IMG/VR virus record: IMGVR_UViG_3300042308_001511
Location: 124,001 to 188,000 of that record
DNA: 64,000 nt
Reading direction: 5' to 3' (one strand)
Part shown: one piece after another, positions 36,527-44,070 of the stretch
Layout of the letters: every line of letters begins with the position of its first letter
How positions within the stretch are numbered: the stretch's first letter is position 1
The notes under the pieces: model-generated
Seen by the model: the letters and a program-made list of their open reading frames with translations, nothing else
The model's database searches: none
What the model was told of the DNA's origin: nothing
Translations under genes and position numbers: made by a program

Positions 36527-36778
36527 ATGGATGAGAATACAAAAGAAAAGTTGATAGAACTCGGTTTCACATACAACAAATCCGAAGAACATTGTATGAT
36601 GAAACATGGAAAGGGTAGATTGATTGTTTGGAAGAACTTGTCTACACCAGGATACTGTCTCGCTTATGATGATAAGAAAGGAATGTCAATACTAATGAGA
36701 ACAAACATAGATATTATATGTGAGGAAATTAGGTCTCTAATAAGAGATGCACGCATCGATGAAGTACTGGGAAATTAA
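36527..36778 (+). CDS. Small hypothetical protein with C-terminal tag
   Basis: Ends RDARIDEVLGN. Confidence 0.6.
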   Translation: MDENTKEKLIELGFTYNKSEEHCMMKHGKGRLIVWKNLSTPGYCLAYDDKKGMSILMRTNIDIICEEIRSLIRDARIDEVLGN

Positions 36779-36808
36779 ACCAAAGAATAAAATCTGCATA
36801 TATACACA

Positions 36809-38662
36809 TTGAGTATGAAAAAGATAGAAGAAAAATACAAAAAACTCGATGACATTGATCACGTACTAGCCAGACCGGGCATGTACGTCGGTTCCATAAA
36901 GCCACACACCGCTAACAAATGGATACTCGACGAGAGTAAGATGACTCAGAAAGAACTCACATATAACCCTGGGTTTCTTAAAATATTTGACGAGATTGTC
37001 ACCAATTCAGTCGATGAAAGTAAACGTGAAGGTACAAGACTAAACACTATAAAGGTCTCTGTCAATAAAGAAACAGGTGAGGTATCCGTTTGGGATAACG
37101 GTGGAATACCTGTTGTGATGCACCAAGAGCATAAAGAATGGATCCCGGAAATGATATTCTCAAATTTGAAGGCAGGTTCCAACTTCGATGATACCGAGGC
37201 CAGGTCGTGGGCAGGGACTAACGGTGTGGGTTCAAGTTTGACCAATATTTATTCTAATAAGTTTGAAATCTCAACTTGTGATGGTAAGAATCATTTTTTA
37301 CAGATATTCACCAACAATATGCGTGAGAGAACTGAACCAGTTATAAAGAAGTCAAAACAGAATCACACTAAGATAACTTTTCAAACTGACTTCAACAGGT
37401 TCGGACTTTCTGGTATTGATGATGATCATATGTTGATGTTAGAGAAAAGAGTTTATGACTTAGCAGCATGTAATACTAACGTAAGAATATTCTTCAACGA
37501 CACACTCATAAACTTTAAAACATTCGAAGATTATGTGAAACTTTATACCGATGAATACTTCTATGAAACCAAAAAAGATGCTACCTGGTCATTGGCTGTG
37601 GCACCATCGGATAATGGTTTCCAGCAAATAAGTTTCGTGAATTCAACTGAGACTTATGATGGCGGTACACACATCGACTACATACTCAACCAGATAATAT
37701 CACAGATGCGTGAGTTCTTTCTCAAAAAACATAAAGTAGATATCAAACCTAATGAGTTGAAGGGACATATGACAATTTTTCTTAACTCTACGGTAATAAA
37801 CCCATCATTCTCATCACAGACAAAAGAGAAGTTGATTACAGAATCGAAAGAATTTGGAACAACCTATGAAGTAGATAAGAAGACTATACAAGCTATACTC
37901 AAATCTGAAATAGTGAATTCTATTCTCGATTGGATCCAACAGAAGAAGAGTGCCGAGGATAGTAAACTACAAAGAGAACTAAACAAAAAACTTAGTAAAC
38001 TTAAAGTCGATAAGTTGATTGATGCAAAAGGTAAAGACAGATGGAAGTGTTCATTGGGATTATTCGAAGGTGACTCTGCAAGTTCAGCATACCGGAAATA
38101 TAGAACACCAGAATTGATGGGTGCGTTTGCACTCAGAGGTAAGTTTATAAATGTTTCGGAACTAACCAACCAAAAATTGGTACAGAACAACGAGGCAGTG
38201 AATCTTATGGCGGCGATTGGACTTAAGTTGGGACAACCGATTGATTTGAAAACGTTGAGATATGGAAAGATACTCATTTACACTGATGCGGATGTCGATG
38301 GTAACTCTATCTCCGGTCTTTTGATAAACTTTTTTCACAAGTATTGGCCGGATATGTTTGATCGTAGAATGATATACAAAGTTGAAACTCCAATTGTTGC
38401 GGTGACACCTAAAACGAAGGGAGATAAGAAGAAACTGTTCTATACACAGACCGAGTATAACGAGTGGGAGAAAACTGCGAATATGAAGAATTGGGAGATT
38501 GCATACAAAAAAGGTCTTGGTGCACTTGTGGATGATGAGTATAGGGACATTATAACCAATCCACGTCTGACACTTATTACACGTGACGAAGCATCATCTA
38601 AATCGCTTACGAATTGGTTCGGAAAAAGTCCAGAGGCGAGAAAAGAGGAACTACTTAAATAG
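36809..38662 (+). CDS. DNA topoisomerase II large subunit (ATPase + TOPRIM; T4 gp39+gp60-like)
   Basis: HVLARPGMYVGS, EIVTNSVDE, GTNGVG, EGDSA, ALRGK, TDADVDG, YKKGLG. Confidence 0.95.
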   Translation: MSMKKIEEKYKKLDDIDHVLARPGMYVGSIKPHTANKWILDESKMTQKELTYNPGFLKIFDEIVTNSVDESKREGTRLNTIKVSVNKETGEVSVWDNGGIPVVMHQEHKEWIPEMIFSNLKAGSNFDDTEARSWAGTNGVGSSLTNIYSNKFEISTCDGKNHFLQIFTNNMRERTEPVIKKSKQNHTKITFQTDFNRFGLSGIDDDHMLMLEKRVYDLAACNTNVRIFFNDTLINFKTFEDYVKLYTDEYFYETKKDATWSLAVAPSDNGFQQISFVNSTETYDGGTHIDYILNQIISQMREFFLKKHKVDIKPNELKGHMTIFLNSTVINPSFSSQTKEKLITESKEFGTTYEVDKKTIQAILKSEIVNSILDWIQQKKSAEDSKLQRELNKKLSKLKVDKLIDAKGKDRWKCSLGLFEGDSASSAYRKYRTPELMGAFALRGKFINVSELTNQKLVQNNEAVNLMAAIGLKLGQPIDLKTLRYGKILIYTDADVDGNSISGLLINFFHKYWPDMFDRRMIYKVETPIVAVTPKTKGDKKKLFYTQTEYNEWEKTANMKNWEIAYKKGLGALVDDEYRDIITNPRLTLITRDEASSKSLTNWFGKSPEARKEELLK

Positions 38663-38713
38663 AATTTAATTCTTACTAAATATAACAACAAATATGAGAA
38701 GTAAATCTTTTCA

Positions 38714-39133
38714 TTAATTTCTAATTAGTATTTGCCGACAGATTTCGTACTCCTCTTTTGTAAAACCTAACCAACTACGACATTTGACTACATTATCCAG
38801 ACCAACGGATTCAATATCTCTTGTGTTATCGTCTATTATTATGTAATTGTCACACGGGTTCTCTCTAAGATACTCTTGTATTTCTAAACCTCTGCCGTCA
38901 TTCAATACTGGTGTTACACCATGTATCTCGGTGGTTATACCATGATATTCGAATATTCTTTGTATTTCTTTCTGAGAGTGTTTGACTCTCCATGTAGAAG
39001 TTATTATTGGTTTTAGATTGAATTCCTGACAAAGGTTATCATACAATTCACATGATAACGAGTTCCAGTCATTTCTGGTCACCGTATTTAGGACACCATC
39101 GATGTCAGTGAATATGTATATAGTTTTGTTCAT
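38714..39133 (-). CDS. HAD phosphatase of the RNA-repair ('Swiss army knife') type
   Basis: FTDIDGVLN, ITSTWR, RGLEIQEYL, YIIIDD, GFT. Confidence 0.8.
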   Translation of the reverse strand: MNKTIYIFTDIDGVLNTVTRNDWNSLSCELYDNLCQEFNLKPIITSTWRVKHSQKEIQRIFEYHGITTEIHGVTPVLNDGRGLEIQEYLRENPCDNYIIIDDNTRDIESVGLDNVVKCRSWLGFTKEEYEICRQILIRN

Positions 39134-39184
39134 TTGAACAAAGATATGAAAAAATTTACTTTGTTCCTATTCTTGGATCTACAT

Positions 39185-39298
39185 CGAACCAATTAGTTAA
39201 TGATGTGGATGATGAGTATAGGGACATTATAACCAATCCACGTCTGACACTTATAACTAGAGATGATGTAGCATCCACATCATTAACTAATTGGTTCG
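39185..39298. repeat. Perfect 27-bp inverted repeat (39185-39211 and 39272-39298)
   Basis: cgaaccaattagttaatgatgtggatg is the reverse complement of catccacatcattaactaattggttcg. Confidence 0.9.
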
Positions 39299-39339
39299 GT
39301 AAAAGTCCAGAGGCGAGAAAAGAGGAACTGCTTAAGTAA
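39204..39339 (+). pseudogene. Diverged duplicate of the last 44 residues plus stop of the topoisomerase large subunit
   Basis: Aligns without gaps to 38527..38662; first 51 nt identical; only 4 amino-acid differences. Confidence 0.9.
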
Positions 39340-39349
39340 ATTTAAGTAT

Positions 39350-40015
39350 TTATATAATATTAGGTTCATCAAACCTATTAACTCTTGATTTTATGGGAGT
39401 AGCATCAAAAAGAACTAACTCACCATCACTATTATATCCTAAATTAAAATTATGAAAGTCTAATTTAGGTAGGTCTTTTAAATTAAAGTAACAATTCCAA
39501 ATTTGAGTTACTAGTTTTTTAGAAAATGGTTTATCTAAATTATATTCTTCTTCTATACTATTAATATAATCTTCTTTTTCCAAACTACCCCAGTTGTAAA
39601 AAATTATATCAGTTGCTAAAACGGCCAATGATTCATATACTCGACCATATTTCATTTTATTAAAAAAATCATTTAATCCTTCTACTCTATCCATTATAAT
39701 CACCCAAAGCATTAAACCTTTAGCTTGATATCTAAAAACATTATAATATTTAACAACTGATATATTAACATTTTTTATTAAATCCAATGCCATTTTTGCC
39801 TCTCTTTTATCGGTTGTTACTTTTAAGACTTTATTATCAAAGGAGTAAGCATTTCCATATGAACCACTTGATAAAAATTTAACTTTATTTATATCAATAT
39901 TTAACTTTTGACAAATATCACCTAATTCAATTTTGGATAATGAAATTGATTTTGAACCATATGGGTGTTTGGGTTTCAAATATCTAAATTCTTTTAACTC
40001 CTTTAAGTATTTCAT
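39350..40015 (-). CDS. Protein-kinase-like protein with N-terminal tag
   Basis: LSSGSYGNAY, VLKVT..E, DFHNFNLG, LFDA; starts MKYLKELKEF. Confidence 0.65.
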   Translation of the reverse strand: MKYLKELKEFRYLKPKHPYGSKSISLSKIELGDICQKLNIDINKVKFLSSGSYGNAYSFDNKVLKVTTDKREAKMALDLIKNVNISVVKYYNVFRYQAKGLMLWVIIMDRVEGLNDFFNKMKYGRVYESLAVLATDIIFYNWGSLEKEDYINSIEEEYNLDKPFSKKLVTQIWNCYFNLKDLPKLDFHNFNLGYNSDGELVLFDATPIKSRVNRFDEPNII

Positions 40016-40865
40016 ATTCTTCTTTTAGAGGTATTCTTGGATCTACATCGAACCTATCACTGATATAATCTTTTAGTTCGTTCTCAATGTAATGATCCGG
40101 AACTTCCATATCATCAGGTTCGGAATCCATTTTCACAATTATGTGTTTATTGAAATCTTCCAGAACTTCTGGTTTTATAGCATCTACGAAACCATCAGAA
40201 ACAACAAAAGCACGTGAGAACCTATCTTTTACATCGAAATCACCTTCTGGAACTTTCATATAATAGGTTACAAAAGTTTTTAGGAAATCAACATATTTAG
40301 AATCTGATTCAACGTGTTTTAGAACCGGTTTTATTATTTTATTGAACGTTCTGGAAGTACCTAATACCAATCCAATTACTGCCAACATAGGATAAAAAGG
40401 TGCCAACAAAAGTGGTATGGCTCTTGGAACTGCTTGCCAGACTGCCTTCTTTGCATCCATTGCGATTTTTGCTTCTTTTGCATCTGCGAATATTGCTCTT
40501 AACATACCGAATGTAAACTTACCACCGCTATTTACAAGATAGTCTTTTAACTTACCTCTTTTTGATAATGAAACCTGCGTAGCAATTTCGTCATCCAATA
40601 ATAGTTCGGAGACCTTTTCAGCCTTTTTGGCTTTTAGTGCCGACCAAAAACGCGTGCTCGATAGAAGATAATCAGAATACCCAAGTTCTTTCAACATAAA
40701 TTTGGCTCGGTCTTCGGTCAAATCAATCAAATTGTTAGCCACACCTAAAAGTCTTTCTTTGTTGGCTGTTTCCGATGCTACCTTTCTGAGTTCAGATTTT
40801 AGATTGTCATCCCTAAGTAGTAGACTCTCGACCACAAAATTTTCATATACTTTAAGCTTTCTCAT
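39984..40865 (-). CDS. N-tagged hypothetical protein with a hydrophobic segment
   Basis: Likely start MRKLKVYENF at 40865, after TTATATATA. Confidence 0.65.
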   Translation of the reverse strand: MRKLKVYENFVVESLLLRDDNLKSELRKVASETANKERLLGVANNLIDLTEDRAKFMLKELGYSDYLLSSTRFWSALKAKKAEKVSELLLDDEIATQVSLSKRGKLKDYLVNSGGKFTFGMLRAIFADAKEAKIAMDAKKAVWQAVPRAIPLLLAPFYPMLAVIGLVLGTSRTFNKIIKPVLKHVESDSKYVDFLKTFVTYYMKVPEGDFDVKDRFSRAFVVSDGFVDAIKPEVLEDFNKHIIVKMDSEPDDMEVPDHYIENELKDYISDRFDVDPRIPLKEEYEILKGVKRI

Positions 40866-40907: not shown

Positions 40908-42248
40908 ATGAGTCAAAAATCGATAACAGACTTCCTAGCGGATGAGTACAAAGAGTTCGCAATGTACACAATTGAGGGTCGAGCCATACCATCCGTCATA
41001 GATGGTTTCAAGCCGACTGCCAGGAAGATAATACACGTAAGTGCCAACATTTGGCGAACTGGACAAGAGAAACCATTGAAGGTATTCCAACTTTCTGGTA
41101 AAGTGGCGTCGGATGCATTTTACCATCATGGATCTTCCAGTTTGGAAAACGCCATCATAACAATGGCACAGAAGTTTAAAAATAACGCTCCACTTCTTGA
41201 AGAGATAGGACAATTTGGATCTCTGAGATCTCCTCAGGCTGCGGCACCTCGATATATTGGAACCAAACTGAACAACAATTTCAGGTTACTCTACAAAGAC
41301 TTTGAACTACTCGACTTCAAAGAAGAGGAAGGTGAAGCGATTGAACCAAAATACTTTTTACCAATTATACCGACAGTATTGATTAATGGATCACAAGGTA
41401 TATCTGTTGGGTTCACTTCAAATGTATTGAACAGAGATGTGAAGGGTATAACAGATGCTTGTATTGATATATTGAAAGGTAAAGAACCAAGAGAAGTCAA
41501 ACCGTCACTCAATGAATTTACTGGTGAATTTACAAGAGATGTTGATAATCACAAAAGGTGGTTGATACGTGGTAAGTTTCAACGAGTAAATACTTCTACT
41601 ATTAGAATAACGGAATTACCACCATCATTGACATATGAGAAATATGAAGAGATTCTTGATGAATTATGTGAGAAAAAGAAGATTGTATCTTACGATGATA
41701 ATTGTGCTGACAACGTTGATTTTACTATAAAATTCACAAGATCTGACTTAGAATCATTAGACGATGAAAAAATTGTAAAGTTATTGAAACTTGAAGAGGC
41801 AGAAACGGAAGCCTTCTCTACTTTGGATGAGAATGGTAAACTTAAAATATTCAATAGTGCATCTGATATAATAAAATACTTTGTAGAATTCAGACTCAAC
41901 TACTATCATAAGAGGAAAGCATTCTTACTTGATAGAATGAATAAAGACCTCAAAATTCTTAGTAATAGAGGAAGATTCATCAAGGCAATACTCGATGAAA
42001 AGTTGAAGATAAACAATGTTCCTAAGGCAGAGATAGTAAAGGGTATAGAGTTACTCGGATTAGACCTGATAGAAGGAAACTATGATTACTTACTCAGGAT
42101 GCCAATCTACTCATTGACACAGGAACTTTTCGAGAAATTAAAAGCAGATTTCACTGCAAAAAAGGTAGAGATAAAGAAATTAGAAGAAACCGAACCTAAG
42201 GATATGTACTTAGACGACTTAGACGAGTTGAAAAGAAAGTTCAAATGA
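40908..42248 (+). CDS. DNA topoisomerase II medium subunit (T4 gp52-like)
   Basis: RAIPSVIDGFKP, YHHG, AAAPRY (catalytic Tyr), ITELP. Confidence 0.95.
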   Translation: MSQKSITDFLADEYKEFAMYTIEGRAIPSVIDGFKPTARKIIHVSANIWRTGQEKPLKVFQLSGKVASDAFYHHGSSSLENAIITMAQKFKNNAPLLEEIGQFGSLRSPQAAAPRYIGTKLNNNFRLLYKDFELLDFKEEEGEAIEPKYFLPIIPTVLINGSQGISVGFTSNVLNRDVKGITDACIDILKGKEPREVKPSLNEFTGEFTRDVDNHKRWLIRGKFQRVNTSTIRITELPPSLTYEKYEEILDELCEKKKIVSYDDNCADNVDFTIKFTRSDLESLDDEKIVKLLKLEEAETEAFSTLDENGKLKIFNSASDIIKYFVEFRLNYYHKRKAFLLDRMNKDLKILSNRGRFIKAILDEKLKINNVPKAEIVKGIELLGLDLIEGNYDYLLRMPIYSLTQELFEKLKADFTAKKVEIKKLEETEPKDMYLDDLDELKRKFK

Positions 42249-43446: not shown

Positions 43447-44070
43447 ATGACTAACATTTTTCCATATCTTTACCGAATGGAAAACAGATTCACTGCAAAG
43501 ATGGAGCCAATAACACGAGCTCTAATACTTACAAACATACTCATATTCATCATCGAACTCGTACTAAGTTCATACGGAATGGAATCGTGGTTCAAACCAT
43601 TAATATTCGATTGTGCCAACATATTACCTCATCAGTTTATCACTTACCAGTTCTTACATAATAGTATAAACCATCTCTACAACAACCTGATTGTACTATA
43701 CTTTTTCGGACCCGCTTGTGAGAGGTTCTTAGGAAAGACTAAGTTCATATTATTATACCTATTATTCGGTGTGATTGCAGTATTTTCACATATGTTACTT
43801 AGTGGTCGTAGCGACACCATAGTCGGTGCATCTGGATCTATATTTGGCATAGTCGCACTTTTCACACTGATAGAAAAATCCTACTTGTACATTAGAGAAC
43901 GAAAAATCCTACCTATCGCTGCAATATCATTCATACTAATAGCAATGGAACTTCCACATATATTTGATCATGATAAAATTGGACATATGGCACATATGGG
44001 TGGTGTCGTATCGGGTGTGATAACATACTTTGTATTTAGGCCTAAAAAAGATTCAGAGTTTCCTGAATAG
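43447..44070 (+). CDS. Rhomboid-family intramembrane serine protease
   Basis: FLH..HLYNN, VGASG, AHMGG, multiple TM segments. Confidence 0.9.
   Translation: MTNIFPYLYRMENRFTAKMEPITRALILTNILIFIIELVLSSYGMESWFKPLIFDCANILPHQFITYQFLHNSINHLYNNLIVLYFFGPACERFLGKTKFILLYLLFGVIAVFSHMLLSGRSDTIVGASGSIFGIVALFTLIEKSYLYIRERKILPIAAISFILIAMELPHIFDHDKIGHMAHMGGVVSGVITYFVFRPKKDSEFPE

What the first reader, a model, noticed from the sequence alone, without database searches (positions are those of the whole stretch)
38527..40054. Two alleles of a variable cassette captured in tandem, joined by a template-switch scar
Seen order: topo 3' end A, HAD gene(-), 3' end of gene X allele A, 27-bp inverted patch (39185-39211 = reverse complement of 39272-39298), topo 3' end B (39204-39339), kinase gene(-), gene X allele B. 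The gene X allele-A end reads ..FDVDPRIGTK*, and 39168-39190 is identical to 40032-40054. Topo end B differs mostly at synonymous sites, as expected for a functional allele from another strain. The junctions use microhomologies (cgaacc; tgtggatg). Inference: the slot between the topo subunits is a hot spot holding either a HAD phosphatase or a kinase, and a double template switch fused both versions. It could equally be an amplification or assembly chimera of two co-occurring strains.
Basis: partly seen in the sequence, partly recalled or inferred. Interest (0 to 1): 0.6.

Follow-up and report, generated by a model that had tools for sequence, protein, structure and literature searches.

The report
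Two gene cassettes fused in tandem
In a 344-kb freshwater phage, one variable slot beside the topoisomerase gene holds both of its alternative cassettes (a phosphatase and a kinase-like gene) in tandem; the join is a real recombination scar found in several independent lake and river samples, and it follows a known kind of mechanism.

Summary
The window comes from a 344-kb IMG/VR phage record. The last 135 nt of the large topoisomerase subunit gene (topoL) occur twice (38527-38662 and 39204-39339), and 23 nt of the gene X 3' end occur twice. A perfect 27-bp inverted patch sits at the joint.

Single-cassette forms exist in public metagenomes. HAD-only contigs equal the window minus 39194-40031. 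One kinase-only contig has the kinase gene 10 nt from an intact topoL. The tandem form, with the same junction letters, is in at least five other samples built by three assembly routes. In two runs, contigs span the junction at flat depth.

End B differs from end A mostly at synonymous sites, so it once belonged to a working gene. The 221-aa gene is protein-kinase-like by fold and motifs.

In this lineage topoL, together with an 83-aa gene, is inverted relative to 34 of 34 related loci. That inversion creates the convergent topoL/gene X junction where the cassettes sit.

The best explanation is one illegitimate recombination between two haplotypes through two microhomology-guided strand switches. 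This is an ordinary kind of event, but it is unusually well documented here.

The parts
36527..36778 (+). g83, an 83-aa gene upstream of topoL and co-oriented with it; probably part of the inverted segment
   Evidence: It is present upstream of topoL in the tandem and HAD-type loci (L052, L053, L059, L061-L063, L065). A weak homologue lies between gene X and topoL in the non-inverted locus L017.
36809..38662 (+). topoL, the large (GyrB-like, Toprim + TOPRIM_C) subunit of a type II topoisomerase; intact; ends with end A
   Evidence: Pfam DNA_gyraseB, Toprim, TOPRIM_C and HATPase_c. It is inverted relative to 34 of 34 related loci.
38527..38662 (+). End A: the working 3' end of topoL; its first 51 nt (38527-38577) are identical to 39204-39254
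38663..38713 (.). Spacer between topoL and HAD; in other strains it holds inserts (a 253-nt insert with an 80-aa gene; a longer spacer, 174 nt instead of 51, with a 47-aa ORF)
38714..39133 (-). HAD-family phosphatase gene (cassette A)
   Evidence: PF18143 HAD_SAK_2, 73.9 bits against a cut-off of 27.5; phrog_1818. The tract 38666-39193 is 99.6% identical to the HAD-only contigs, while the flanks are about 96%.
39156..39190 (-). 35-nt remnant of the gene X 3' end, allele A (tail ..PRIGTK-stop)
   Evidence: In HAD-only contigs the same letters are the true end of a 281-aa gene X.
39185..39211 (.). 27-nt inverted patch, the reverse complement of 39272-39298; bounded by microhomologies of 6 nt (39185-39190) and 8 nt (39204-39211)
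   Evidence: It is absent from the HAD-only and kinase-only contigs.
39204..39339 (+). End B: dead remnant of the last 44 codons plus stop of another topoL allele
   Evidence: Most differences from end A are synonymous. It is collinear with topoL plus the kinase gene in L082 and L069. The frame closes 71 codons upstream of its stop.
39350..40015 (-). kin, a 221-aa protein-kinase-like gene (cassette B); GC 0.25 against about 0.36-0.40 around it
   Evidence: N-lobe Z 10.1 to APH(4)-Ia, and all top 50 matches are kinase-fold proteins. K65, E72, D186, N191 and D204 are invariant. GC. No hit in any family library.
39984..40865 (-). Gene X (293 aa, function unknown), allele B tail, overlapping the kin start
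   Evidence: It is conserved next to topoM in many relatives. A 4-nt indel after 40014 in other strains ends it just before kin.
40908..42248 (+). topoM, the GyrA-like subunit
   Evidence: PF00521, E 1e-88

Best explanation
This is a real, inherited tandem of two alternative accessory cassettes. In this phage lineage topoL is flipped, so that it converges on gene X. The gap between the two genes holds either a HAD phosphatase (type A) or a kinase-like gene (type B). One illegitimate recombination joined a type A genome, 35 nt into the end of gene X, to a type B genome, 135 nt before the topoL stop. The product keeps both cassettes plus a dead copy of each gene end. The join was made by a growing DNA end that paired at 6 nt with the opposite strand of the type B topoL end, copied 21 further bases backwards, then paired at 8 nt about 70 nt upstream and went on forwards. 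This left a perfect 27-bp inverted repeat. Shown: the structure, its reality, the single-cassette forms, and the microhomologies. Inferred: that a single event made it, whether it happened at a replication fork or during repair of a break, and that coinfection brought the two types together.
For: The repeats and the inverted patch are exact. HAD-only contigs equal the window minus 39194-40031. The kinase-only contig L082 has kin 10 nt from an intact topoL, and another contig has at least 107 open codons after kin, whereas the tandem frame closes after 71. The tandem contigs L052, L053, L054 and L057 carry identical junction letters apart from one SNP (L056, which stops inside end B, agrees over the part it covers), although their working topoL ends differ. 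In the likely source run a 686-nt contig spans 38548-39233 at depth 15.2, with flanks at 15 and 14.6. In an unrelated study a 721-nt contig spans 38666-39375 at depth 30.5, with flanks at 30.5 and 29.6. The patch is absent from both single-cassette forms. End B shows purifying-selection-type differences.
Against: No genome with exactly the end B allele as its working topoL end was found. The first 51 nt of end B resemble type A alleles more than L082, so end B is itself a mosaic. The 51-nt repeat unitig in the source run has depth 17 where about 30 is expected; this is unexplained. Only contigs could be laid, not raw reads. One event cannot be told apart from two (a plain join followed by a local template switch).
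Confidence: 0.75

Rival explanations
1. Assembly or amplification chimera of two co-occurring strains, each with one cassette.
For: Both single-cassette forms do occur in the same kind of samples. The contigs of the source run break at the 51-nt repeat.
Against: The junction has only 6- and 8-nt overlaps, too short for a k-mer assembler to invent. The same junction is in JGI, ENA and Logan assemblies of different samples. Depth is flat across both cassettes in two runs. One strain has a 9-nt deletion inside the patch, so the structure has evolved.
Confidence: 0.02
2. Two steps: a plain microhomology join of the gene X end to the topoL end, followed later by a local short-range template switch that made the inverted repeat perfect.
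For: Short template switches that create perfect hairpins are a documented mutation class (PMC5453318, PMC8794818). The strain in run X10 has a different patch, 9 nt shorter.
Against: The 9-nt loss lies between two copies of a 6-nt direct repeat and looks like a later slip. No tandem contig without the patch was seen.
Confidence: 0.15
3. The HAD-only contigs seen today derive from the tandem, by deletion between the 23-nt gene X repeats. A deletion between the 51-nt repeats would likewise give a kinase-only form carrying end B, but none was found.
For: The HAD tract is 99.6% identical between the window and the HAD-only contigs, while the flanks are about 96%, and the breakpoint lies exactly in the repeat.
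Against: The tandem needs an earlier type A genome to supply the gene X allele-A end. L082 does not carry end B, so it is not a deletion product.
Confidence: 0.15
4. A selected, functional element: the hairpin and the repeats act as a regulated switch or an RNA signal between kin and HAD.
For: The stem is strong. The junction is conserved in five contigs. The 9-nt deletion in X10 is in frame.
Against: There is no recombinase within 5 kb, no Rfam family above threshold and no terminator-like tail. The conservation is explained by recent common descent.
Confidence: 0.05

Closest known systems
Short-range template-switch mutations (four-point model; quasi-palindrome switching), PMC5453318 and PMC8794818
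   Same: The new segment is the exact reverse complement of nearby sequence. It creates a perfect hairpin-forming repeat and has short homologies at the switch points.
   Different: The first switch starts in another gene about 840 nt away, or on another genome. The event therefore also makes a tandem duplication of two different alleles, not only a local cluster of changes.
Microhomology-mediated tandem duplication by illegitimate recombination or break-induced replication, long known for phage T4 rII duplications (my own knowledge, not checked here)
   Same: There are duplicated gene ends on both sides, one new joint at a few shared bases, and the product is tolerated by the phage genome.
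   Different: The two copies come from diverged haplotypes and carry unrelated genes. The joint contains an inverted insert.
Hyperplastic regions and PeSL-mediated modular shuffling in T4-type phages (PMC2839356, PMC4122927)
   Same: A slot between conserved core genes where small accessory genes are swapped among close relatives.
   Different: No shared promoter/stem-loop motif flanks the cassettes here. The exchange points are the ends of the flanking genes themselves.
Homing-endonuclease traffic at T4 topoisomerase genes (the mobA / gene 39-60 cassette; my own knowledge, not checked here)
   Same: The same gene family is a target of selfish elements. Relatives carry inteins in topoL and topoM, and a free-standing HNH/NUMOD4 gene next to topoL.
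   Different: The window itself has no endonuclease gene at the locus. A break made by one is only a conjecture for what started the event.

Membership tests
Short-range template-switch mutation | The inserted letters are an exact reverse complement of a nearby stretch | tested here: met
   27 of 27, 39185-39211 against 39272-39298
Short-range template-switch mutation | Pre-event sequences without the patch exist | tested here: met
   HAD-only and kinase-only contigs lack it
Short-range template-switch mutation | Departure and return lie within one short local stretch of the same locus | tested here: not met
   The departure point is the gene X end, about 840 nt away in a type B genome or on a second genome
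Tandem duplication by illegitimate (microhomology) recombination | Both flanking sequences are duplicated, with one novel joint at a short homology | tested here: met
   135 nt of topoL and 23 nt of gene X are duplicated; homologies of 6 and 8 nt
Tandem duplication by illegitimate (microhomology) recombination | Single-copy parental arrangements exist | tested here: met
   L059 and others (HAD only); L082 (kinase only)
Tandem duplication by illegitimate (microhomology) recombination | The joint is on single molecules at full depth | tested here: met
   Contigs span it at depth 15.2 against 15 and 14.6, and at 30.5 against 30.5 and 29.6; these are contigs only, no raw reads
PeSL-type modular shuffling | A conserved promoter plus stem-loop motif flanks the exchanged module | tested here: not met
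   There are no shared flanking motifs beyond the gene-end repeats; promoter- and terminator-like sites are at chance level
Homing-endonuclease mobile cassette | An endonuclease gene in or beside the cassette | tested here: not met
   None in the window within 5 kb. An HNH_3/NUMOD4 gene is present only in HAD-only relatives
Site-specific inversion or shufflon | A recombinase gene and inverted crossover sites at the segment ends | tested here: not met
   No recombinase family; no long inverted repeat brackets topoL
Protein-kinase-like superfamily (for the 221-aa gene) | Kinase N-lobe fold | tested here: met
   Residues 23-113: Z 10.1, rmsd 2.4 over 83 residues to APH(4)-Ia; all top 50 matches are kinase-fold; all listed Foldseek matches are kinase-fold proteins but weak
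Protein-kinase-like superfamily (for the 221-aa gene) | Catalytic set: glycine loop, Lys, Glu, D-x4-N, metal-binding Asp | tested here: inconclusive
   G51..Y57, K65, E72, D186, N191 and D204 are invariant in 6 sequences, but the C-lobe model has pLDDT under 50 and there is no Pfam hit
HAD_SAK_2 (PF18143) | Score above Pfam's gathering cut-off | tested here: met
   73.9 bits against 27.5; covers 1-138 of 139 profile positions

The most novel reading that the evidence does not exclude
The tandem is not only a scar but a standing toggle. The 51-nt and 23-nt direct repeats would let recombination drop either cassette again, so that one lineage keeps producing HAD-only, kinase-only and double forms. 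The flipped topoL and the hypervariable patch near its end would then mark a break-prone site driven by the endonucleases and inteins seen in relatives.
Probability: 0.1. Interest if true: 0.6.

Novelty: new member of a known kind. Interest (0 to 1): 0.4.

Why it matters
Phage mosaicism is usually inferred from end products. Here the recombinant, forms of both single-cassette types and the exact joint are all visible in natural populations. The case can therefore serve as a worked example of how illegitimate, strand-switching recombination stacks accessory genes next to an essential gene. It also flags a lineage in which an essential topoisomerase gene has been inverted in place, and a small kinase-like gene that moves between phage lineages whose core genes are only about 72% identical.

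Tried and rejected
An exact 32-nt search for the end B core in IMG/VR found nothing. The kinase protein found nothing in metagenome contigs or viral contigs, probably because near relatives are withheld there. A search with the last 107 residues of topoL, and the members of its best hit's cluster, gave further alleles of the variable patch but none with the end B letters. L057 first looked kinase-only, but its 71-codon frame fits the tandem. An apparent head-to-tail kin-kin joint (40018 to 39346) turned out to be a different lineage in which kin is followed by a 227/237-aa gene that begins with the same five residues. Pfam, PHROGs, NCBIfam and PADLOC gave nothing for kin or gene X. Rfam gave only a sub-threshold match to a generic hairpin model.
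Full report
Source and anatomy. The window is bases 124001-188000 of a single 344,083-base IMG/VR virus record, estimated 91% complete. Its nearest GenBank phage matches are uncultured huge phages at about 71% nucleotide identity over the topoisomerase genes. The genes at the locus are:
- g83 (36527-36778, +);
- topoL, a GyrB-like large topoisomerase subunit with Toprim and TOPRIM_C (36809-38662, +);
- a HAD_SAK_2 phosphatase (38714-39133, -);
- a 221-aa gene called kin here (39350-40015, -);
- gene X (39984-40865, -);
- topoM, GyrA-like (40908-42248, +).

Check of the observation.
- The last 135 nt of topoL recur at 39204-39339, and the first 51 nt of the two copies are identical.
- 39168-39190 equals 40032-40054.
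- 39185-39211 is the perfect reverse complement of 39272-39298 across a 60-nt spacer. As single-stranded DNA this folds far better than shuffles (z -6.6).
- The two topoL ends differ at 18 nt. 14 of these lie in 38578-38611, and 12 of the 16 changed codons are synonymous. End B therefore evolved as part of a working gene before it was cut off.
- The open frame that holds end B closes 71 codons upstream of its stop and has no start before the GTG at 39205. I read it as a dead remnant.

Is it real? Twenty runs from nine freshwater studies hold the stretch. All are kept as contigs, so no read pairs could be seen.
- In the likely source run the contigs break only at the 51-nt exact repeat, as a k=31 graph must. 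A 686-nt contig runs without a difference from 38548 to 39233, across end A, HAD, the gene X remnant, the patch and the start of end B. Its depth is 15.2, with flanks at 15 and 14.6.
- In a run of another study, a diverged strain carries one 721-nt contig from 38666 to 39375. It has 28 differences and a 9-nt deletion inside the patch. Its depth is 30.5, with flanks at 30.5 and 29.6.
- Exact-protein look-ups fetched tandem contigs from other samples, assembled by JGI, ENA submitters and Logan (L052-L058). Where they cover the joint, the letters are the same apart from one SNP at 39269.
- Overlaps of 6 and 8 nt are too short for an assembler to create.
- One oddity remains: the 51-nt repeat unitig of the source run is listed at depth 17 rather than about 30.

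The single-cassette forms.
- HAD-only contigs from at least five samples (L059, L061-L064, L066, L067) read topoM, gene X (281 aa, ending ..GTK), HAD, an 80-aa gene, topoL. They equal the window with 39194-40031 removed, and the breakpoint lies inside the gene X repeat. The HAD tract is 99.6% identical, while the flanks are about 96%.
- L082 is kinase-only: gene X, kin, then an intein-bearing topoL on the other strand, with 10 nt between the stops, exactly as between kin and end B.
- A further 1.1-kb contig, for which no DNA was served, has at least 107 open codons after kin. That is too many for the tandem form.
- A distant phage (L069, kin 65% identical) also has kin converging on the topoL stop, and it aligns collinearly with kin plus end B.
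- L082's topoL end is nevertheless a third allele. It shares with end B only the last 65 nt or so, the spacer and kin. I did not find the exact end B parent.

The joint. In natural HAD-only sequence, gene X continues after cgaacc. In the tandem, the patch follows instead, and the patch's source strand also reads cgaacc at that point. At the other side, tgtggatg is shared by the patch and by topoL. A growing 3' end that left gene X of a type A genome would give exactly these letters if it:
1. paired with the opposite strand of a type B topoL end;
2. copied 21 further bases;
3. re-paired about 70 nt upstream on the proper strand.
A fold-back of a broken end at the 7-8 nt inverted homology, followed by a switch into a type A genome, gives the same product. 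I cannot tell the two apart. The patch is absent from both single-cassette forms. End B is identical in all tandem contigs, while their working topoL genes differ by up to 15%. This points to one founding event that has since spread or diverged.

- In 34 of 34 related IMG/VR loci that show both subunit genes at 65-75% protein identity, the order is topoM on one strand and then (gene X,) topoL and the window's 36179 and 35653 homologues on the other strand.
- In four more distant loci, topoL is followed directly by topoM.
- In the window and all its close haplotypes the flanks are collinear with these relatives, but topoL is flipped, probably together with g83. No long inverted repeat or recombinase explains the flip.
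- The flip creates the convergent topoL/gene X gap in which the cassettes lie.

The neighbourhood is generally restless.
- Inteins occur in topoL and topoM of relatives.
- An HNH/NUMOD4 endonuclease gene lies beside topoL in HAD-only genomes.
- Indels of 250 nt and other sizes occur between HAD and topoL.
- topoL itself is a mosaic of 57-100% identity tracts between otherwise roughly 96% identical genomes.
- kin is low in GC (0.25). It is 96% identical in protein to the kin of a lineage whose topo genes are only about 72% identical in DNA and not inverted (L068, L072-L081). There it sits between gene X and a 227/237-aa gene. It has therefore moved laterally.

The genes. The label 'kinase' is supported.
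- The model's N-terminal half matches kinase N-lobes (Z 10.1), and every one of the top 50 matches is kinase-fold.
- The lysine, the glutamate, D-x4-N and the metal-binding aspartate are invariant.
- A feature search points to clusters that include T7-type phage kinases.
- The C-lobe model is poor and no family library hits it, so activity is unproven.
- HAD is a clear HAD_SAK_2 member.

Comparison and verdict. The joint works like a template-switch mutation (PMC5453318, PMC8794818) combined with a microhomology tandem duplication. It is not a PeSL-type exchange (PMC2839356, PMC4122927), not a homing cassette in the window, and not a site-specific switch (see the membership rows). It is a new, well-documented instance of known processes. 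I rate it of moderate interest, mainly as a natural case in which the recombinant and forms of both single-cassette types can all be read.

Step left out.

Noticed in passing
window 36527-38662, compared with L004-L050: topoL, probably together with g83, is inverted in place relative to 34 of 34 related loci, while both flanks stay collinear. No bracketing inverted repeat or recombinase was found.
   Followed up: partly
L052 (topoM), L053 and L082 (topoL); run X10 at window 38253/38324: Relatives carry inteins or other 1.3-1.6-kb inserts in both topoisomerase genes. Many database fragments begin with an intein end (..SHN) followed by the extein.
   Followed up: partly
L059 8799-9656 (also L061-L063): A free-standing HNH_3/NUMOD4 endonuclease gene and a 57-aa gene lie upstream of topoL in HAD-only genomes. 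The topoL 5' half next to them is only 57-64% identical to the window's.
   Followed up: partly
window 39350-40015; L068, L072-L081: kin has GC 0.25. It is 96% identical in protein to the kin of a lineage whose topo genes are about 72% identical in DNA, where it is followed by a 227/237-aa gene that starts with the same five residues. This indicates lateral transfer of kin plus the 3' half of gene X.
   Followed up: partly
window 40014-40018: Other strains have 4 extra bases (TATT) here. Gene X then stops just before the kin start, instead of overlapping kin by 32 nt as in the window.
   Followed up: no
window 38594-38611 (topoL residues about 594-600): This is a short hypervariable patch of topoL with at least four protein alleles in public data, flanked by near-identical DNA. 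It might be a target or immunity site for an endonuclease.
   Followed up: no
window 38666-38669: This is the breakpoint of a 253-nt indel that carries an 80-aa gene in HAD-only contigs and in L065. L052 has a longer, different spacer with a 47-aa ORF at the same place.
   Followed up: partly
window 39204-39254, run X1: The unitig of the 51-nt exact repeat is listed at depth 17, although two copies at about 15 each should give about 30.
   Followed up: no
L057 1-54: This 963-nt contig begins with the patch plus the gene X remnant joined directly to kin. It is either a mis-join at the 23-nt repeat or a form with a further repeat unit.
   Followed up: no
window 43447-44070: A phage-encoded rhomboid-family protease gene (PF01694, E 9e-26) lies about 1.2 kb downstream of topoM, after three small genes, and is conserved in the related haplotypes.
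   Followed up: no
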